Assembly: GCA_002269645.1 (NCBI GenBank) | Contig: NIVC01002262.1 | Location: 62,001-126,000 of the forward strand | Reading direction: 5' to 3' | Length of the DNA: 64,000 nt | Origin: Macrostomum lignano | Lineage: Eukaryota | Shown: one piece after another, positions 1 to 59,480 of the stretch | Position numbering within the stretch: the stretch's first letter is position 1 | Layout of the letters: every line of letters begins with the position of its first letter | Position numbers and translations under genes: made by a program | The notes under the pieces: model-generated | Told to the model about the DNA's origin: nothing | The model's input: the letters and a program-made list of their open reading frames with translations, nothing else | Database searches by the model: none

Positions 1-293
1 CTAAATTGGTGCTAAACTCTTGTCTAGGACACTAAATTGGTGCTAAACTCTTGTCTAGGACACTAAATTGGTGCTAAACTCTTGTCTAGGACACTAAATT
101 GGTGCTAAACTCTTGTCTAGGACACTAAATTGGTGCTAAACTCTTGTCTAGGACACTAAATTGGTGCCAAACTCTTGTCTAGGACACTAAATTGGTGCTA
201 AACTCTTGTCTAGGACACTAAATTGGTGCCAAACTCTTCTCTAGGACACTAAATTGGTGCTAAAATCTTGTCTAGGACACTAAATTGGTGCTA
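1..293. repeat. 31-bp tandem minisatellite (CTAAATTGGTGCTAAACTCTTGTCTAGGACA), ~9 copies, truncated by window edge
   Basis: Directly visible period-31 repeat; probably in the intron downstream of the ASK-like exon. Confidence 0.95.
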
Positions 294-829
294 AGGTTTT
301 TATTTTTGCTACAAACAATTTTCAGACAAAAAAGCGTTTTAAAAGCGAAACAGGCCTTTTATTACAGAATTAAAAATCGAGCTACATTTTTAACAGATTT
401 CACCAGCTATTATTGTCTATGCCTTGTTTATTTCATAAATAGAAATGCTTTCTTAGTGCTAAATATTATTCTATACAGTTTAAAATGCACAATTCAAATT
501 TTAAAACTTTCAATTCGACAAATTTGGCTTGAAATTTGACCAGCTGGGCAAATTAAAATAGGCTCTAATTGAAATGGCTGCGATAATTATTACCATTGAC
601 AAAGTATAGCATAAAATAAGCATAGAACTATTAAATTATGCGGTTCCATCGTTTATTTTAGCAGTGCTTTTTTATCCATGACTGCAGAATTTAGCTGTCA
701 GCAGCTGTCGAATCAAAAGTTTAAACAAAATGAACCTTACACCTCTAAGAATTCTTTTAGATCACAGGGGTAGGCGAACTTTTTATCCTCAGAGGCAGAT
801 AAATAATTTAGCTCGCGTCTGCGGGCCAG

Positions 830-975: not shown

Positions 976-1125
976 AAGACCCTGAGCGGGCCGAGTAGCT
1001 ATTGTGGAGTTTCAAAGAACCCGAGAGCCGGACAGAGAGGCTTTGTGGGCTAGAGTTCGCCCTCCTCTGTCAAGACTCGCACACACTAAGCCTATAGTCC
1101 AAGACAATTTTTTCAGTTGTCTCAC

Positions 1126-1355
1126 CGCTTGCAGGCTCGCTCAACATCGGCGAACGCCTTCTGACGGGGAGCCGTTGACGTCAATGACGGCGACGCCGGG
1201 GCGGCGGTTCCCAGAGGCGCGGTCTGGTCGACAACACAAACAACGCGGAGTCGCGACGCGGAGCCGCAGCCGCCAGATGTTGAACCGGCAGCTGAGGCGG
1301 CGGCTGCAGCAGCGCCACCGCTCGAGGCAGCCTGCTGGCTGTGCAAGCTTGCGGC
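1126..1355 (-). CDS. 5' exon of an ASK-family MAP3K (MAP3K5/MAP3K15-like); the rest of the gene lies beyond the left window edge
   Basis: Acceptor TTGCAG| at 1356, donor CG|GTGAGA at 1125. Translation ...RLRVVCVVDQ...RQKAFADVERACK resembles the invertebrate ASK N-terminus (recalled as VVCVID...RKRALEEVRQAC). No in-frame ATG in or near the exon. Confidence 0.55.
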
Positions 1356-1492
1356 CTGCAATTTTGCAATAAGTTTAGCTTGTCAAAATCGTTTCTAGCC
1401 TACTTGCAGTAGAGTAGTGGGACATTTCTGGATAATTTTTTGTAAGGGGGCGGCGGCGCTGACGTAAATCGAGGCCAGGCCGCACGCACGCG

Positions 1493-2366
1493 GACCAAGG
1501 ACTACTCAAGCAGAAGGAAGACCTAAGAAGGAAGGCAGACCTGATGTTAATCTTTTGACCAAGGACTACTCAAGCAGAAGGCAGACCTAATGTTAATCTT
1601 TCGATCAAGGACTACTCAAGCAGAAGGAAAACCTAAGAAAGAAGGCAGACCTGATGTTAATCTTTCGATCAAGGACTACTCAAGCAGAAGGAAAACCTAA
1701 GAAAGAAGGCAGACCTGATGTTAATCTTTCGATCAAGGACTACTCAAGCAGAAGGAAGACCTAATGTTAATCTTTTGATCAAGGACTACTCAAGCAGAAG
1801 GAAGACCCAATGTTAATCTTTTGATCAAGGACTACTCAAGCAGAAGGAAGACCCAATGTTAATCTTTTGATCAAGGACTACTCAAGCAGAAGGAAGACCC
1901 AATATTAATCTTTTGACCAAGGACTACTCAAGCAGAAGGAAGGCAGACCTAATGTTAATCTTTTGATCAAGGACTACTCAAGCAGAAGGAAGACCTAATG
2001 TTAATCTTTTGACCAAGGACTACTCAAGCAGAAGGAAGACCTAATGTTAATCTTTTGACCAAGGACTACTCAAGCAGAAGGAAGACCTAAGAAGGAAGGC
2101 AGACTTAATGTTAATCTTTTGACCAAGGACTACTCAAGCAGAAGGAAGACCTAAGAAGGAAGGCAGACTTAATGTTAATCTTTTGACCAAGGACTACTCA
2201 AGCAGAAGGAAGACCTAAGAAGGAAGGCAGACTTAATGTTAATCTTTTGATCAAGGACTACTCAAGCAGAAGGAAGACCCAATGTTAATCTTTTGAACAA
2301 GGACTACTCAAGCAGAAGGAAGACCTAATTTTAATCTTTTGAACAAGGACTACTCAAGCAGAAGGA
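1493..2366. repeat. ~46-bp minisatellite (CAAGGACTACTCAAGCAGAAGGAAGACCTAATGTTAATCTTTTGAC) with longer variant units
   Basis: About 17 units visible between THOC7 and the ASK-like exon. Confidence 0.95.
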
Positions 2367-3019
2367 CAGGGAATGTTTGAGGCTGGTTTTCGCCGAAAAA
2401 TACACTACGGAGATGGAAATTTTCAGCACAAAAAATGTTATTGCTTTGGATAGGAGGCAGACCCAATGCTCATATTTTAATACGTTGTGTCGTTCTTATA
2501 GCTCTATTGATATTCAAAAAAGCTTTTCGTTTAAAACTAGATTCATAAAACCGATGAGCTGAGCTGTGCCATTTTAATGGTGTTTTTAGGCAAGACATAT
2601 GCAATTGTACAGTACATAGAATAAAAAAATTAACACAAAATCCTAATTTTCTAAACAAAAAGCTTTATGAATATCAATAATTCCCGTCTCCTCTGATGCT
2701 ACAGAGCTACAGAGTCCCCATCTGGACAATCATATATGTATGATGACACTTAACTATTGCAAATTAGCAAAACAGAGACCCTCAAGATGGCAACAGAGCA
2801 GGATATTGTTATTGTTCAAATGTTTATTGATAACATTGATAACAAGCCACGTGTTAATGAAACACGCCAAAATGCAATTAGTTTAAACTAGTAAGTCATA
2901 ATAATTGTGGTTAGAAGAGAAAACATGGGCATTTATACTACTAGGATAAGTAAGTAGTTGAGAGGGACATGATTTCTCAGTCTTGCAAGTTTCGCTGTTT
3001 GCCTCAAAACCAAAGACAG

Positions 3020-5148
3020 CTAGCTGCTAGACGCCGAAGGCTTATTCAGCATTACAACATCTTTATCTTCATCATTCGCTGCAGCCTCCTCGGGTTCGAC
3101 TGACGCGTCCGGCGGCTCGACTTCCAAATCGGTCGCGTCGCCGGATTCGCCGCCTTCGTCTTCTTCAAACGCGGCGGCTGACGAGAAATCGCGCAGAGCA
3201 GCTGCCAACAGGCGGCACTGGCGCCGGCGCGCTTCCAGCCTGGCGCCGAGGCGCCGGTCAGTCTGGCGCAAACTGGCTAGTCTGGCGCCCATTTCGGCTA
3301 GGCGAGCTTCACTTGAGGCGCGGTCGGGGTGGCCGAGAATCACGCCGGCCTGGGTGTCGTATTCCTGACGGTTGCGGCGGCACTGCATGGCCGTCTCGAG
3401 CTCCGACTGAGAGTTAAGAATTTTAGTGCGAGGTAAACGGCGTGAGTAGCTGTTCACAGATTCAAATGTGTGGAGCCTCGGCAGCTAATTACTACTCAGT
3501 GAGATTGAGGACAGGGTCTATGGATGGTGTTTAAGGACAGGGTCTATGGATGGTGTTTAAGGACAGGGTCTATGGATGGTGTTTAAGGACAGGGTCTATG
3601 GATGGTGTTTAAGGACAGGGTCTGTGGATGGTGTTTAAGGACAGGGTCTGTGGATGGTGTTTAAGGACAGGGTCTGTGGATGGTGTTTAAGGACAGGGTC
3701 TGTGGATGGTGTTTAAGGACAGGGTCTATGGATGGTGTTTAAGGACAGGGTCTATGGATGGTGTTTAAGGACAGGGTCTATGGATGGTGTTTAAGGACAG
3801 GGTCTATTGATGGTGTTTAAGGACAGGGTCTATGGATGGTGTTTAAGGACAGGGTCTATGGATGGTGTTTAAGGACAGGGTCTGTGGATGGTGTTTAAGG
3901 ACAGGGTCTGTGGATGGTGTTTAAGGACAGGGTCTGTGGATGGTGTTTAAGGACAGGGTCTATGGATGGTGTTTAAGGACAGGGTCTATGGATGGTGTGT
4001 AAGGACAGGGTCTGTGGATGGTGTTTAAGGACAGGGTCTGTGGATGGTGTTTAAGGACAGGGTCTATGGATGGTGTTTAAGGACAGGGTCTATGGATGGT
4101 GTTTAAGGACAGGGTCTATGGATGGTGTTTAAGGACAGGGTCTGTGGATGGTGTTTAAGGACAGGGTCTGTGGATGGTGTTTAAGGACAGGGTCTGTGGA
4201 TGGTGTTTAAGGACAGGGTCTGTGGATGGTGTTTAAGGACAGGGTCTATTGAGGGTGTTTAAGGACAGGGTCTATTGAGGGTGTTTAAAGACAGGGTCTA
4301 TTAAGGGTGTTTAAAGACAGGGTCTATTGAGGGTGTTTAAAGACAGGGTCTATGGATGGTGTTTAAGGACAGGGTCTGTGGATGGTGTTTAAGGACAGGG
4401 TCTATGGATGGTGTTTAAGGACAGGGTCTATGGATGGTGTTTAAGGACAGGGTCTATGGATGGTGCTTAAGGACAGGGTCTATGGATGGTGTTTAAGGAC
4501 AGGGTCTGTGGATGGTGTTTAAGGACAGGGTCTGTGGATGGTGTTTAAGGACAGGGTCTGTGGATGGTGCTTAAGGACAGGGTCTGTGGATGGTGTTTAA
4601 GGACAGGGTCTATGGATGGTGTTTAAGGACAGGGTCTATGGATGGTGTTTAAGGACAGGGTCTGTGGATGGTGTTTAAGGACAGGGTCTATTGAGGGTGT
4701 TTAAGGACAGGGTCTATTGAGGGTGTTTAAGGACAGGGTCAACTGGGGGTGTTTAAGGGCAGTCTTCCGAGAGTGGTAAAAATAAAGGAAAGACACGAAT
4801 AAAGATCTCTCCGACGAGACCCAAGCTCACCTGCAACTGCACAATCCGTGCTTCCGCAGCCTGAATCTCCTCGGCAACCTGGTCGCCCAGAGCCCGATAG
4901 TGCTGCTGCTCGGTCCTGTTCACTTCCTCTGCTCTGGCTGCGCGGCCCATCGCAGCCTCCAGTTGGGCCACGTGAACCAGCAGCTGCTGCAGGGTCTGGC
5001 CGTCTTTGGCCGGGGCGGGGGCGGCCTCCAGCCAGGCTGCCAGCTGCCGCGTAGCGTACTGCAGCTTCTTGTCCTCGCGGCCGGAGTCGCCTTCCACCAA
5101 TAGCCGGCGCTTGATCACCTCTTCCTCTGTGACAGCCAGCAGTGGCAT
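3020..5148 (-). CDS. THOC7: THO complex subunit 7; exons 5148-4831 and 3406-3020 (234 aa)
   Basis: AVTEEEVIKRRLLVEGD and RRNRQEYDTQAGVILGHPDR...LEARRRQ match THOC7 motifs. Phase-0 GT-AG intron 4830-3407 keeps the frame. Confidence 0.9.
3508..4757. repeat. 26-bp minisatellite (GGACAGGGTCTATGGATGGTGTTTAA), ~47 copies, fills the THOC7 intron
   Basis: Direct tandem repeat with A/G variants. Confidence 0.97.
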
Positions 5149-5162
5149 GGTGCATCGTTGCA

Positions 5163-5725
5163 GGCTGGGGTGACTGCATCACTGGAGGCTGGGGGTGACT
5201 GCATCACTGGAGGCTGGGGGTGACTGCATCACTGGAGGCTGGGGGTGGCTGCATCACTGGAGGCTGGGGTGACTGCATCACTGGAGGCTGGGGTGACTGC
5301 ATCACTGGAGGCTGGGGTGGCTGCATCACTGGAGACTAGATGTGACTGCATCTCTGGAGGCTGGGGTGACTGCATCACTGGAGGCTGAGTGTGACTGCAT
5401 CTCTGGAGGCTGGGGTGACTGCACCACTGGAGGCTGGGGGTGACTGCATCTCTGGAGGCTGGGGTGACTGCATCTCTGGAGGCTGGGGGTGACTGCATCT
5501 CTGGAGGCTGGGGGTGACTGCATCTCTGGAGGCTAGGTGTGACTGCATCTCTGGAGGCTGGGTGTGACTGCATCTCTGGAGGCTGGGATGACTGCATCAC
5601 TGGAGGCTGAGTGTGACTGCATCTCTGGAGGCTGGGGTGACTGCATCACTGGAGGCTGGGTCTGACTGTATCTCTGGAGGCTAGGTGTGACTGCATCTCT
5701 GGAGGCTGGGTGTGACTGCATCACT
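5163..5725. repeat. 24-25-bp minisatellite (GACTGCATCACTGGAGGCTGGGGGT) immediately 5' of the THOC7 ATG
   Basis: Direct tandem repeat; the unit resembles the flanking unique sequence TGCATCGTTGCAGGCTGGGGTGAC. Confidence 0.95.
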
Positions 5726-6969: not shown

Positions 6970-9490
6970 TCATGCAGTCTTCAAGTCGGACTCCGCAGCC
7001 CCAGCTCCGTGCTGCCACAGGCCGCCAGGCAGCGGCCGTTCAACAATGTCTCCCAGATGAAACACCTGCCGAGCCGGCCGCTTGTTAGCTCGGCCGAATC
7101 GCAGCGCCTGGCGCAGGTTGGCAACAAAGTGTGGCGGCTCTTGACGCGGCGAAGTTGACAATTTAGCCAAGGCCGAATCAGGCGCGTCCGCATAAGCGTC
7201 GAATATCTGGCTGCCGCTGTAGTCAAAGGGTCGCAGCACCAGGCAGTGACTGTCTGGATCGTACACCTGAGGCATTGTGCAATAAGTTAGCAATTGGGCT
7301 TCTCAGCACATTCACTGGCAGTTAAAAGTTAGAAGCGAATTTCAGATGAATTCTGAGGCGAATCTCAGATGAATTCTGAGGTGAATTTCAGATGAATTCT
7401 GAGGCAAATTTCAGATGAATTCTGGGGCAAATCTCAGATGAATTCTGAGGCGAATCTCAGATGAATTCTGAGGCAAATCTCAGATGAATTCTGAGGCAAA
7501 TCTCAGATGAATTCTGAGGCAAATCTCAGATGAATTCTGAGGCAAATTTCAGATGAATTCTGGGGCAAATCTCAGATGAATTCTGAGGCGAATCTCAGAT
7601 GAATTCTGAGGCAAATCTCAGATGAATTCTGAGGCAAATCTCAGATGAATTCTGAGGCAAATCTCAGATGAATTCTGAGGCGAATCTCAGATGAATTCTG
7701 AGGCAAATTTCAGATGAATTCTGAGGCAAATCTCAGATGAATTCTGAGGCAAATTTCAGATGAATTCTGAGGCAAATTTCAGATGAATTCTGAGGCAAAT
7801 TTCAGATGAATTCTGAGGCAAATCTCAGATGAATTCTGAGGCAAATCTCAGATGAATTCTGAGGCGAATCTCAGATGAATTCTGAGGCAAATTTCAGATG
7901 AATTCTGAGGCGAATCTCAGATGAATTCTGAGGCGAATCTCAGATGAATTGAGGCGAATTTCAGAAGAATTCCGAGGTGAATTTCAGAAGAATTCCGAGG
8001 TGAATTTCAGAAGAATTCCGAGGTGAATTTCAGAAGAATTTCGAGGTGAATTTCAGAAGAATTCCGAGGTGAATTTCAGAAGAATTTCGAGGTGAATTTC
8101 TAAAGAATTCTGAGGTGAATTTCAGATGAATTCTGAGGCGAATTTCAGAAGAATTCCGAGGCGAATTTCAGAAGAATCCCGAGGTGAATTTCAGAAGAAT
8201 TCTGAGGCGAATTTCAGAAGAATTCCGAGGCGAATTTCAGAAGAATTCTGAGGCGAATTTCAGAAGAATTCTGAGGCGAATTTCAGAAGAATTCCGAGGC
8301 GAATTTCAGAAGAATTCTGAGGCGAATTTCAGAAGAATTCCGAGGTGAATTTCAAAAGAATTCCGAGGTGAATTTCAGAAGAATTCCGAGGTGAATTTCA
8401 GAAGAATTCCGAGGTGAATTTCAGAAGAATTCCGAGGTGAATTTCAGAAGAATTCCGAGGTGAATTTCAGAAGAATTCCGAGGTGAATTTCAGAAGAATT
8501 CCGAGGTGAATTTCAGAAGAATTCCGAGGTGAATTTCAGAAGAATTCCGAGGTGAATTTCAGAAGAATTCCGAGGTGAATTTCAGAAGAATTCCGAGGTG
8601 AATTTCAGAAGAATTCCGAGGTGAATTTCAGAAGAATTCCGAGGTGAATTTCAGAGGAATTCTGAGACGATTTTTTAAACGAACTGAAAATGGATATCCT
8701 CACATTCAAGTAGCAACTATTCAAGGATTTCAGAATAGCTGCTCTCACGACAAACTCTAACAAACAGACGACGCCAAGCCCCAACCAGAGTTCCACTCTG
8801 CCGACAGACCTCAAACACGACTTCCTCGCGGCTCAGAAACCGCAGTCCGCGCAACGCCTGCCAGGGCCCTCGGACAGGCAGCGGCACCTTGGCGGGCGTC
8901 AGCGAGCCATCGGCAACGGACATCACCAGCCCAGTGATCACCGGATACACGAGGTTGTCCGCGCCGCGCCTGGCGCCATTACTCGGCGCCAAGCAGGCGG
9001 TGCGCAACCGGAAGCGAAGCCGGGAGCGACGAAAAGCCTGCAGCAGTTCTTGGGTGAGCGAAGCGGACTCGCCACGGGAGTCGGGGAAGCCGCCGACCAG
9101 GTGCAGGTCCAGTTCGACCGAGCCGCTGCTGCCGGAGCCGCAGAAGCGCTCATCGACAATGAAGACAAGACTGCTGGCGCCGGCGCCATCAAAGTGGCAC
9201 AGCAGGGTGTCGCCCGTGGCCGGATTTCGCACGGCAACCAAATGACAGGTGGTGGCATCGTCCGAGGCCAGCAGCTGGACGGCCGGATCTGTCCGGCGGA
9301 CGAAGGCGCACTCGCGCTGGTGCAGGTAGAGCAGGCCGGCCGGCCCAGCCTGAATCGGCGGCGTCGACACCAAGCGGAGCGCCGATTGGGCAAGCGCCGG
9401 ACAGGACAGGACGGTGGACAGGGCCGACTTAGGACTGGACAGATCCGTGCTGGACAGTGGACGGCTGTTCGAGTCCAGGTAGACAACCAT
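6970..9490 (-). CDS. NTAN1: Protein N-terminal asparagine amidohydrolase; exons 9490-8810 and 7266-6970 (325 aa)
   Basis: LLYLHQRE, SDDATTCHLV, HFDG, LHLVGGF, STSPRQEPPHFV match the NTAN1 family. Phase-0 GT-AG intron 8809-7267. Confidence 0.93.
7337..8670. repeat. 23-bp minisatellite with two homogenised domains (GCAAATCTCAGATGAATTCTGAG then GTGAATTTCAGAAGAATTCCGAG), NTAN1 intron
   Basis: About 57 units, most containing GAATTC. Confidence 0.97.
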
Positions 9491-14727: not shown

Positions 14728-20641
<5,914 letters not shown>

Positions 20642-27571: not shown

Positions 27572-36571
<9,000 letters not shown>

Positions 36572-49460: not shown

Positions 49461-59143
<9,683 letters not shown>

Positions 59144-59480
59144 CTGGCTGGCTCTGGAGAGTTTCACAGTGGCTAATTGATATTTAATATTGAAATTTTC
59201 GCAAAGTTTTTTTATGATATTATATGATTTTTGTTTTAGAGCCTAAATGGTTAACCTATAGAATCATTCTTTAAAATATTTTTCTACTCTAATTTACTTC
59301 CTTTCCATTTTAAATTCTAAATATATGAAACAAATGAACAAATTAATTTAGTTTAATAGGGGTCTATGCATTAGTAATAGTGCCAACAATGCTACAAATA
59401 CTTGATAGCCAAGTAGTCACATCAAGCCAAGTAGTTAATAAGATTAAATAGCATGTCTGATTATAACTTGTAAACAAATA

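What the first reader, a model, noticed from the sequence alone, without database searches (positions are those of the whole stretch)
1126..1430. ASK-like kinase exon with no ATG of its own: start codon possibly donated by the spliced leader
Seen: the exon opens at an acceptor (TTGCAG|GCC GCA AGC) exactly in phase 0 with the ASK-like frame. No ATG is in frame. The only nearby ATG (1425) either hits a stop or, spliced through the 48-nt GT-AG gap 1403-1356, enters the wrong frame. Established: flatworm spliced leaders end in AUG, which can act as the initiator Met. Inference: trans-splicing at 1356/1355 would give M-A-A-S-L-H-S-Q..., making translation of this MAP3K dependent on SL addition.
Basis: partly seen in the sequence, partly recalled or inferred. 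Interest (0 to 1): 0.8.

Follow-up and report, generated by a model that had tools for sequence, protein, structure and literature searches.

The report
ASK kinase exon lacking its own ATG
The first coding exon of a Macrostomum lignano (flatworm) ASK-type stress kinase has no start codon of its own and most likely borrows the AUG at the end of the trans-spliced leader, a mechanism known in flatworms since 2006, so this is a new example rather than a new phenomenon.

Summary
On the minus strand an exon runs 1355..1126. It opens at aaaaTTGCAG|GCC and closes at AAGCG|GTGAGA, with 76 open codons and no in-frame ATG. ATG 1425 fails both unspliced and through the 48-nt GT-AG intron.

The organism is the flatworm Macrostomum lignano: the neighbouring THOC7 gene is 100% identical to a UniRef M. 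lignano entry. Its spliced leader (SL) ends in ATG.

The exon belongs to an ASK-family MAP3K. UniRef models A0A1I8JIM8 and P0013 contain it at 100% identity and continue into MAP3K_TRAF_bd domains.

Those models start "LQAASLHS", that is TTG CAG plus the exon. A BLASTN simulation shows that an SL-bearing cDNA aligns to the genome from 1362 (ATTGCA-G|GCC), which gives exactly "LQ". This is indirect but specific evidence for trans-splicing at 1356/1355, yielding M-A-A-S-L-H-S.

The gene models argue against it, but it is not excluded.

No SL-junction read could be examined. Confidence in an SL-donated start is about 0.65. This is a new member of a known kind and of modest interest.

The parts
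1126..1355 (-). First coding exon of the ASK-family MAP3K gene. It has 230 nt: 76 codons plus 2 nt (phase 2 at the donor). It encodes AASLHSQQ...RLRVVCVVDQ...RQKAFADVERACK(R). The rest of the gene lies beyond the left edge of the window.
   Evidence: Translation. It is 100% identical to residues 3-78 of UniRef A0A1I8JIM8 (P0003) and to P0013. Coding periodicity.
1356..1361 (-). 3' splice acceptor TTGCAG. It matches the M. lignano trans-splice acceptor motif [T/C]TNCAG and is the proposed SL addition site (junction 1356/1355).
   Evidence: Motif taken from PMC8629364.
1356..1362 (-). ATTGCAG, the genomic heptamer that resembles the SL 3' tail ATTGCATG. It accounts for the spurious 'LQ' at the start of the public gene models.
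   Evidence: In the BLASTN simulation, SL plus exon aligns from 1362 with one gap. P0003 and P0013 start LQAASL; P0006 starts CRPASL.
1365..1372 (-). TTATTGCA, identical to SL nucleotides 26-33. It may be a chance match or part of the AT-rich acceptor region.
   Evidence: It is the longest k-mer shared between the SL and the 45 nt upstream of the acceptor. The 8-mer occurs 3 times in the 128 kb of both strands.
1383..1385 (-). In-frame TGA upstream of the exon. It closes the reading frame 10 codons before the acceptor, so no unspliced upstream start is possible.
1357..1495 (-). Proposed outron (minimum extent). An AT-rich stretch at 1357-1440 is preceded by a G+C-rich unique segment at 1441-1495. 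That segment may hold a promoter, or the outron may continue into the intergenic repeat if the gene is in an operon.
   Evidence: Sequence. The extent is inferred.
1423..1425 (-). The only ATG within 1 kb upstream. It is out of frame both unspliced and through the GT-AG intron, and in frame only through a GC-AG intron.
1398..1403 (-). GT donor candidate CAA|GTAGGC. It is a poor match to the M. lignano consensus GT[G/A]AG. Used with acceptor 1356, it gives a 78-codon out-of-frame ORF.
   Evidence: Consensus from PMC8629364.
1402..1407 (-). GC donor candidate ACT|GCAAGT (rival model). The 52-nt GC-AG intron 1407..1356 would give MSHYST-AASLHSQQ... in frame.
1120..1125 (-). 5' splice donor GTGAGA of intron 1, a consensus GT[G/A]AG site.
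   Evidence: The models continue ...ACK-R-VGL after this point.
1496..2366 (.). Tandem repeat array with 46- and 64-nt units, filling most of the THOC7-ASK intergenic space.
2823..2828 (-). AATAAA, the likely poly(A) signal of the upstream THOC7 gene.
3020..5148 (-). THOC7 gene on the same strand, directly upstream. Exons are 5148..4831 and 3406..3020. It is a candidate first gene of an operon with the ASK gene.
   Evidence: The spliced product is 100% identical over 234 aa to UniRef A0A1I8IWR3, THO complex subunit 7, M. lignano.

Best explanation
The exon at 1355..1126 (minus strand) is the first coding exon of a Macrostomum lignano ASK-family MAP3K. The pre-mRNA comes either from a promoter just upstream or as a polycistronic transcript with THOC7. 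It is SL trans-spliced at TTGCAG|G (1356/1355). The 35-nt leader ends in AUG, and that AUG lands in phase 0 with the exon. The mature mRNA therefore reads ...UUAUUGCAUG|GCC GCA AGC..., and translation starts at the leader's AUG to give M-A-A-S-L-H-S-Q-Q...

Shown: the exon, its frame, the lack of its own ATG, the organism, the ASK identity of the gene, the fit of the acceptor to the motif, and the 5' ends of the public models.

Inferred: that the SL is actually joined here, and that ribosomes initiate at its AUG.
For: 1. Organism: the spliced THOC7 product is 100% identical to a M. lignano UniRef entry.

2. Spliced leader: the M. lignano SL is CGGTCTCTTACTGCGAAGACTCAATTTATTGCATG. The trans-splice acceptor motif is [T/C]TNCAG, 30% of genes are trans-spliced, and 45% of conserved genes are (PMC8629364). 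A legend in PMC10468722 marks the final ATG of Macrostomum SLs as a translation start codon.

3. Acceptor and frame: TTGCAG at 1361-1356 fits the motif and is the only such site in the intergenic region. SL-ATG plus the exon is in frame and open.

4. Gene models: P0003 (A0A1I8JIM8) and P0013 contain the exon at 100% identity, spliced in frame to ASK domains. PF13281 scores E 1.5e-67 and 6e-98. P0003 is 38% identical to human ASK1 (E 4e-62).

5. Model 5' ends: neither P0003 nor P0013 has an initiator Met. Both start 'LQ' (TTG CAG). The frameshifted copy P0006 starts 'CRP' (TGC AGG CC). All three are consistent with a cDNA alignment starting at 1362 or 1361.

6. Simulation: BLASTN of SL plus exon against the genome starts at 1362 (ATTGCA-G|GCC). 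A cDNA carrying the ATG-1425 mini-exon would instead align from 1355 plus a separate upstream block, and would give a Met start.

7. Homologues: P0014 and P0015 have a genome-encoded Met 38-42 residues before the first beta strand (RPRIDVVLVID, KPKIDVAVLID). The SL-Met model puts Met 35 residues before RLRVVCVVD.

8. Operon geometry: THOC7 lies upstream on the same strand. From the THOC7 stop codon to the acceptor is 1.66 kb. From its AATAAA signal (2828) to the acceptor is about 1.45 kb, of which about 0.87 kb is tandem repeat. The repeat-adjusted distance is thus below the 1-kb operon threshold of PMC8629364.

9. Precedent: in S. mansoni the SL AUG is in frame in 28% of trans-spliced transcripts, and more than 40 cDNAs need it (Cheng 2006, quoted in PMC9851317).
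Against: - No read, EST or contig joining the SL to 1355 could be inspected. No contig of this locus or its mRNA is on record in the collections reached.
- The 'LQ' argument depends on how the ML2 models were built, which I could not read.
- An in-frame cis alternative exists through a GC-AG intron.
- The exon peptide is not significantly similar to other ASK N-termini on its own. BLASTP finds nothing, and a three-sequence HMM gives p of about 0.04 against shuffles.
- The AlphaFold model is unreliable for residues 1-140, with pLDDT below 50. Translation of the whole exon is therefore not proven.
- The context of the SL AUG has a weak -3 position (U), from the SL sequence.
Confidence: 0.65

Rival explanations
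1. Conventional cis-splicing through a non-canonical GC-AG intron. Transcription starts upstream of 1425. The mini-exon ends ...ATG TCC CAC TAC TCT ACT|. The 52-nt intron GCAAGT...TTGCAG (1407..1356) is removed, and the genome-encoded ATG 1425 starts MSHYSTAASLHSQQ...
For: The join is exactly in frame. GCAAGT is the consensus form of GC donors, and apart from +2 it fits the M. lignano GT[A/G]AG pattern (consensus). A G+C-rich unique segment at 1441-1495 could hold a promoter. It is the only upstream ATG with a consensus-like phase-0 donor in 1.66 kb.
Against: GC-AG introns are roughly 1% of introns in animals (general knowledge). The exon side of the donor, ACT, lacks the usual AG. A GT donor competes 4 nt downstream. 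Three cDNA-derived models lack MSHYST and a Met, and instead begin with acceptor-derived residues. The simulation shows a mini-exon cDNA would not produce that start.
Confidence: 0.08
2. The exon, or most of it, is effectively 5' leader. Whether or not an SL is added, productive initiation is at a downstream AUG. The first in-frame Met is residue 110 of P0003, in the next exon. The open frame through exon 1 would then be tolerated rather than required.
For: An open 76-codon frame is expected by chance in 46% of shuffles of this G+C-rich sequence. Exon-alone homology is not significant. The significant BLASTP alignment to human ASK1 begins at residue 115, just after Met110. The AF2 model gives no confident structure for residues 1-140.
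Against: The claimed frame has coding-type periodicity. The motifs RLRVVCVVD and RQKAFADVERACK align collinearly with beta1 and alpha1 of human ASK1 and of P0014/P0015, including an invariant Cys. Homologues start about 40 residues before beta1. If the SL is present, its AUG is the first AUG and is in frame. Met110 lies in a segment that is an insertion relative to all homologues.
Confidence: 0.1
3. No SL is involved. Either a conventional transcription start sits at about 1362 with non-AUG or downstream initiation, or an unrecognised cis exon further upstream or in a region of mis-assembly supplies the ATG. This includes a 1-2 nt assembly indel that would put ATG 1425 in frame through the GT-AG intron.
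For: Direct SL evidence is missing. The models' 5' ends at 1361-1362 would also fit a transcription start there. The repeat-rich surroundings make mis-assembly conceivable, and P0006 shows that indel-laden copies exist in one assembly.
Against: A transcription start 7 nt upstream of a consensus trans-splice acceptor would be a coincidence. No other upstream ATG has a usable donor. The exon sequence is identical in two independent public models. The models would have included an upstream exon if the cDNAs had carried one.
Confidence: 0.08

Closest known systems
SL 3'-terminal AUG used as initiator methionine in Schistosoma mansoni (Cheng, Cohen, Ndegwa & Davis 2006, J Biol Chem 281:733; cited in PMC9851317, PMC12582326, PMC5832876)
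   Same: A flatworm SL ending in AUG is spliced in phase to an exon that has no in-frame AUG of its own, so the leader supplies the Met.
   Different: That case was shown experimentally, in a trematode and for other genes. Here the organism is a free-living macrostomid, the gene is an ASK-type MAP3K, and the SL junction and initiation are inferred, not observed.
slORFs (ORFs created by SL addition; slORFfinder, PMC9851317)
   Same: The ORF exists only after the leader is joined. Annotation pipelines that trim or ignore the SL miss the start. Here they yield 5'-partial proteins beginning 'LQ'.
   Different: slORFs are called from SL reads plus ribosome footprints. Neither was available for this locus.
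M. lignano SL trans-splicing and operons (Ustyantsev & Berezikov 2021, PMC8629364; Wudarski et al. 2017, PMC5730564)
   Same: The acceptor motif TTGCAG is present. The gene is conserved, a class in which 45% of genes are trans-spliced. An upstream gene lies on the same strand at a repeat-adjusted distance below 1 kb.
   Different: I could not consult the published SL-read track for this gene, so its trans-spliced status and operon membership are predictions.
ASK1/MAP3K5 family (human ASK1 N-terminal region, PDB 8QGY)
   Same: The gene models containing the exon carry MAP3K_TRAF_bd, TPR-S and part of DRHyd-ASK. They are 38% identical to human ASK1 over about 300 residues.
   Different: Only exon 1 is in the window. 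The kinase domain was not seen, because the models are truncated. The N-terminal tail is low-complexity Ala/Ser/Gly. The models carry an extra segment of about 34 residues that looks like a duplicated exon.

Membership tests
ASK (MAP3K5/6/15) family | MAP3K TRAF-binding / central regulatory domain (PF13281) with TPR-S | tested here: met
   P0003 scores PF13281 E 1.5e-67 and PF20308 4e-19. P0013 scores PF13281 6e-98. Both contain the window exon at 100% identity.
ASK (MAP3K5/6/15) family | N-terminal thioredoxin-binding / DRHyd-ASK domain, whose first strand and helix would be encoded by this exon | tested here: inconclusive
   PF20309 hits residues 114-134 only, at 22 bits, below the 26.6 cut-off. 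The exon alone gets no Pfam, PDB or BLASTP hit. A small HMM gives p of about 0.04. The motifs align collinearly. The AF2 model has low confidence there.
ASK (MAP3K5/6/15) family | Ser/Thr kinase domain followed by the C-terminal HisK-N-like / coiled-coil region | not testable with these tools
   These parts lie outside the window, and the public M. lignano models found are truncated at 358 and 482 aa. In the homologue locus L002, the ORFs that follow do carry ASK_PH, Pkinase and HisK-N-like.
mRNA with SL-donated initiator AUG (flatworm type) | The organism trans-splices an SL that ends in AUG | tested here: met
   The organism is M. lignano. The SL sequence ends ...TTGCATG (PMC8629364).
mRNA with SL-donated initiator AUG (flatworm type) | [quoted passage not shown] | tested here: inconclusive
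   The acceptor TTGCAG fits the motif. Two weak or non-canonical cis donors lie 48 and 52 nt upstream: GTAGGC and GCAAGT.
mRNA with SL-donated initiator AUG (flatworm type) | The SL AUG is in frame with the conserved ORF, with no in-frame stop and no in-frame genomic AUG before the conserved domain | tested here: met
   MAASLHSQQ... is open through the exon and, in the models, onward into the ASK domains. The first genomic Met is residue 110 of P0003.
mRNA with SL-donated initiator AUG (flatworm type) | The SL-exon junction is observed in RNA | not testable with these tools
   No transcript contigs of this species are on record. The only evidence is indirect: the gene models start at the position where the SL tail would align.
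mRNA with SL-donated initiator AUG (flatworm type) | Translation initiates at the SL AUG | not testable with these tools
   This needs ribosome profiling, N-terminal proteomics or reporter assays.
M. lignano operon (criteria of PMC8629364) | Adjacent genes on the same strand, repeat-adjusted distance below 1 kb, and a downstream gene that is SL trans-spliced | tested here: inconclusive
   Strand and distance criteria are met. From the THOC7 AATAAA signal to the acceptor is about 1.45 kb, minus about 0.87 kb of tandem repeat. Trans-splicing of the downstream gene is inferred only.

The most novel reading that the evidence does not exclude
Production of full-length ASK in M. lignano is strictly gated by SL trans-splicing. 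Without the leader there is no start codon, and the competing cis donors 48-52 nt upstream yield either a blocking out-of-frame uORF (GT-AG) or an alternative N-terminus (GC-AG). The gene is co-transcribed in an operon with the mRNA-export factor THOC7. The SL-like 8-mer TTATTGCA beside the acceptor would contribute to the choice between cis- and trans-splicing. This would make splice-mode choice a regulatory switch for a stress-kinase pathway.
Probability: 0.08. Interest if true: 0.55.

Novelty: new member of a known kind. Interest (0 to 1): 0.3.

Why it matters
If confirmed, this adds a conserved stress-signalling kinase (ASK/MAP3K5 family) to the flatworm genes whose start codon exists only after spliced-leader addition. 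It would be a concrete case in the transgenic model M. lignano, where the requirement can be tested by mutating the acceptor.

There is also a practical point. Public protein entries for this gene (A0A1I8JIM8 and its relatives) begin with two residues, 'LQ', that appear to come from the outron. Pipelines that trim the leader leave such genes 5'-partial or push the start to a downstream Met. The likely true N-terminus is MAASLHSQQ...

The mechanism itself has been known since 2006, so the result extends knowledge rather than changing it.

Tried and rejected
1. I first thought an alternative acceptor 8 nt downstream (AG 1349-1348) would put ATG 1425 in frame. That rested on misreading the donor as AAG|GT. 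The script showed the mini-exon ends CAA|GT, and neither acceptor restores the frame. Rejected.

2. Direct searches with the 76-residue peptide found nothing:
- the word-indexed protein search. This was a false negative, since HMMER later found 100% identical UniRef entries;
- Pfam;
- PDB;
- BLASTP against human ASK1;
- BLASTP against P0014 and P0015.

3. Attempts to fetch the genomic or transcript context beyond the window all failed:
- exact-product look-ups for the NTAN1 ORF, THOC7 (P0001), P0003 and the TTG-started ORF returned nothing;
- a scan of metagenome contigs with the first 30 nt of the exon found nothing.

4. No SL RNA gene or SL copy lies in the window, allowing up to 3 mismatches.

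5. The supplementary tables of PMC5816591 hold no MAP3K5, MAP3K15, MAP3K6 or THOC7 rows. The supplements of PMC5730564 are small. The Wasik et al. 2015 paper is not held, so the method behind the ML2 gene models could not be read.

6. AlphaFold2 on P0013 with a 10-sequence alignment gave mean pLDDT 49.9, below 50 for residues 1-140. A strand at 41-45 and a helix at 64-79 sit where expected, but the model is too poor to use.

7. Other upstream ATGs between 3019 and 1426 all stop within 3-42 codons, and none is followed by a phase-0 donor resembling the consensus.

Full report
**What is in the sequence**

On the minus strand, an AT-rich stretch ends in the acceptor aaaaTTGCAG (1361..1356). A 69% G+C segment follows, running from G1355 to G1126, and ends at the donor GCG|GTGAGA.

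- From 1355 the frame GCC GCA AGC TTG ... AAG CG is open for 76 codons and has no ATG.
- Ten codons upstream in the same frame there is a TGA at 1385-1383.
- The only ATG within a kilobase upstream is at 1425-1423.
- Unspliced, that ATG reads MSHYSTASRLETILTS*. Spliced CAA|GTAGGC (1403) to CAG| (1356), a 48-nt intron, it enters another frame and stops inside the exon.

The open frame by itself means little, because 46% of dinucleotide-preserving shuffles of the exon are also open in frame 0. The claimed frame does show the G-at-position-1 and RNY periodicity of coding sequence (0.47 and 0.43, against 0.22-0.28 and 0.14-0.29). This matches the neighbouring THOC7 CDS.

**Organism**

Directly upstream on the same strand lies a two-exon gene (5148..4831 and 3406..3020). 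Its spliced product is 100% identical over 234 residues to UniRef A0A1I8IWR3, THO complex subunit 7 of Macrostomum lignano. The window is therefore from this free-living flatworm.

What the literature says about its trans-splicing:
- Its single spliced leader is CGGTCTCTTACTGCGAAGACTCAATTTATTGCATG.
- The motif enriched at trans-splice acceptors is [T/C]TNCAG.
- 30% of all genes and 45% of human-conserved genes are trans-spliced (PMC8629364).
- A figure legend in PMC10468722 marks the final ATG of Macrostomum leaders as a translation start codon.

The "not a flatworm" refutation condition is thus ruled out.

**Identity of the gene**

The 76-residue peptide alone matches nothing:
- the word-indexed search;
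- Pfam;
- the PDB;
- human ASK1, whose N-terminal sequence I verified against PDB 8QGY.

The exhaustive HMMER search did find UniRef100_A0A1I8JIM8 (P0003, 358 aa), named "Mitogen-activated protein kinase kinase kinase" of M. lignano. It contains the exon at 100% identity as residues 3-78. A search with P0003 found a second model, P0013 (482 aa), with the same start.

Both models continue ...ERACK-RVGL... into unmistakable ASK sequence:
- PF13281 MAP3K_TRAF_bd at E 1.5e-67 and 6e-98, TPR-S, and a partial DRHyd-ASK hit.
- For P0003, 38% identity to human ASK1 with E 4e-62.

"ASK-like" is therefore confirmed for the gene. Only exon 1 is in the window, and the kinase domain was not seen.

**Is exon 1 translated?**

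The significant alignment to human ASK1 begins only at residue 115 of P0003. In a multiple alignment with two more distant homologues that have complete N-termini (P0014, P0015) and human ASK1, the exon's motifs align as follows:
- RLRVVCVVD aligns with RPRIDVVLVID, KPKIDVAVLID and TTVAYVINE.
- RQKAFADVERACK aligns with RQAAYDEVQRSC, RAECLEIIKRAC and EALQSLREAC. The Cys is invariant.

A three-sequence HMM of that region scores the exon at 2.5 bits, reached by 183 of 5000 shuffles (p about 0.04). The two motifs come in the right order. This is supportive but not strong.

The homologues place their genome-encoded Met 38-42 residues before the first strand. An SL-supplied Met would lie 35 residues before it.

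An AlphaFold2 model of P0013 puts a strand at 41-45 and a helix at 64-79. Its pLDDT is below 50 for residues 1-140, so it adds nothing reliable.

**Evidence for spliced-leader addition at 1356/1355**

No RNA reads or transcript contigs of this species were reachable, so the junction itself could not be seen. Three lines of evidence point to it.

First, TTGCAG fits the published trans-splice motif. It is the only such site in the 1.66 kb between the THOC7 stop and the exon.

Second, the geometry fits an operon:
- THOC7 is on the same strand.
- Its AATAAA signal is at 2828.
- About 0.87 kb of the roughly 1.45 kb from that signal to the acceptor is a 46/64-nt tandem array.
- The repeat-adjusted distance is therefore below the 1-kb criterion of PMC8629364.

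Third, and most specific, is the shape of the public gene models:
- None starts with Met or with MSHYST.
- P0003 and P0013 start "LQAASLHS", that is TTG CAG plus the exon.
- The frameshifted copy P0006 (A0A1I8FLW8) starts "CRPASLHS", that is TGC AGG CC....
- All three are explained by a cDNA-to-genome alignment that begins at 1362 or 1361.

The leader's 3' tail is ATTGCATG and the genome reads ATTGCAG|G. When I aligned SL plus exon to the genome with BLASTN, the alignment began at 1362 with a single gap (ATTGCA-GGCC). A cDNA carrying the ATG-1425 mini-exon aligned from 1355 plus a separate upstream block, and would have given a Met start.

No AG precedes TTG, so an ab initio exon boundary would not fall there. 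The in-frame TGA at 1385 also means that a longer unspliced cDNA could not have produced a 5'-open ORF.

The caveat is that I could not read how those models were built.

Four bases upstream of the weak GT donor there is ACT|GCAAGT (1408/1407). GCAAGT is the usual form of a GC donor. A 52-nt GC-AG intron to the same acceptor is phase 0 on both sides and gives MSHYST-AASLHSQQ... in frame.

I rate it at about 0.08, for three reasons:
- GC-AG introns are rare.
- The exon side of the donor lacks AG.
- The gene models do not show the mini-exon.

Junction reads would settle it at once.

Other rivals:
- Initiation at a downstream Met, with exon 1 acting as leader: about 0.10.
- A leaderless transcript, a hidden upstream exon or an assembly error: about 0.08.

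**How it most likely works**

1. The primary transcript is either monocistronic from the G+C-rich unique segment at 1441-1495, or polycistronic with THOC7.
2. It is trans-spliced at 1356/1355, and the outron is discarded, including ATG 1425.
3. The leader's terminal AUG becomes the first AUG of the mRNA, 33 nt from the cap and in phase with the exon.
4. Translation gives MAASLHSQQAASSGG... followed by the ASK regulatory domains.

If the GT-AG cis intron were used instead, ATG 1425 would open a 78-codon out-of-frame ORF overlapping the start region. The cis-splicing and trans-splicing outcomes therefore differ in coding capacity.

Steps shown: the anatomy, frames, organism, gene identity and model 5' ends. 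Steps inferred: the SL junction and the use of its AUG.

**Comparison with what is known, and verdict**

This is the mechanism described for Schistosoma mansoni by Cheng et al. 2006. [quoted passage not shown] It was later generalised as "slORFs". The M. lignano leader is already noted to carry a start-codon ATG.

The present case is therefore a new member of a known kind. Its practical value is for annotation: the likely true N-terminus is MAASL..., not LQAASL... It also offers a testable example in a transgenic flatworm. Confidence in the SL-donated start is about 0.65, and interest is 0.3.

Noticed in passing
window 3020-5148 (-), with 3508-4762: A complete two-exon THOC7 gene. Its single intron is almost entirely a 26-nt x 48-copy tandem array. 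Just upstream of its ATG (5148) lies another tandem array (about 5160-5600) in which every unit carries an ATG. There is also an out-of-frame ATG 7 nt before the start, so this gene too may need 5' processing to clear upstream AUGs.
   Followed up: partly
off-window; P0003/P0013 residues 79-113 versus 114-148: The M. lignano ASK models carry two consecutive, weakly similar 34-residue segments: RVGLTCISFGHIINDVDTAAELFYSAHAVIVMLTD and LVQFTHLDYGTTTALHEFYNSEVAITEMS... The first is an insertion relative to human ASK1, P0014 and P0015. The noisy copy P0006 seems to skip it. This may be a tandemly duplicated exon, possibly mutually exclusive, wrongly included twice in the models.
   Followed up: partly
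window 1365-1372 (-): TTATTGCA, identical to SL nucleotides 26-33, lies 9 nt upstream of the acceptor. It is followed by a second ATTGCA (1362-1357). The 8-mer occurs only 3 times in both strands of the window. It may be chance, a local duplication, or a feature of the acceptor region.
   Followed up: partly
The word-indexed protein search returned no hit for the exon peptide, although a 100% identical UniRef protein is in the same collection. The low-complexity Ala/Ser/Gly content probably defeated the word index. Negative results from that tool on such peptides should not be trusted.
   Followed up: yes
window 1-294, 1496-2366, and many arrays across the window (for example 24.6-25.6 kb, 26.7-27.7 kb, 28-31 kb, 32.2-33 kb, 34.1-34.6 kb, 55.4-57.7 kb): Tandem and microsatellite-like repeats are very dense in introns and intergenic DNA. 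They create long spurious ORFs on both strands. This is typical of M. lignano and a hazard for ORF-based annotation.
   Followed up: no
window 8717-9490 (-), 16274-17284 (+), about 33800-33990 (+), 58625-59167 (-): Other genes recognised by Pfam: protein N-terminal asparagine amidohydrolase (NTAN1-like, E 6e-41), CFAP91 (E 4e-58), a GATA zinc-finger factor (E 9e-16) and a cation-efflux/ZnT transporter (E 1e-34). The NTAN1 ATG (9490) is preceded at about 9506 by a CTTCAG acceptor-like site.
   Followed up: partly
L002 / L003 (Logan SRR11635883; JGI 3300034981): The closest non-Macrostomum homologue found (P0015, 38% identity) sits on an environmental contig. The whole ASK gene there is split into only three long ORFs: DRHyd/TRAF_bd, then PH plus kinase, then HisK-N-like. 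A genome-encoded ATG starts it. The organism was not identified.
   Followed up: no
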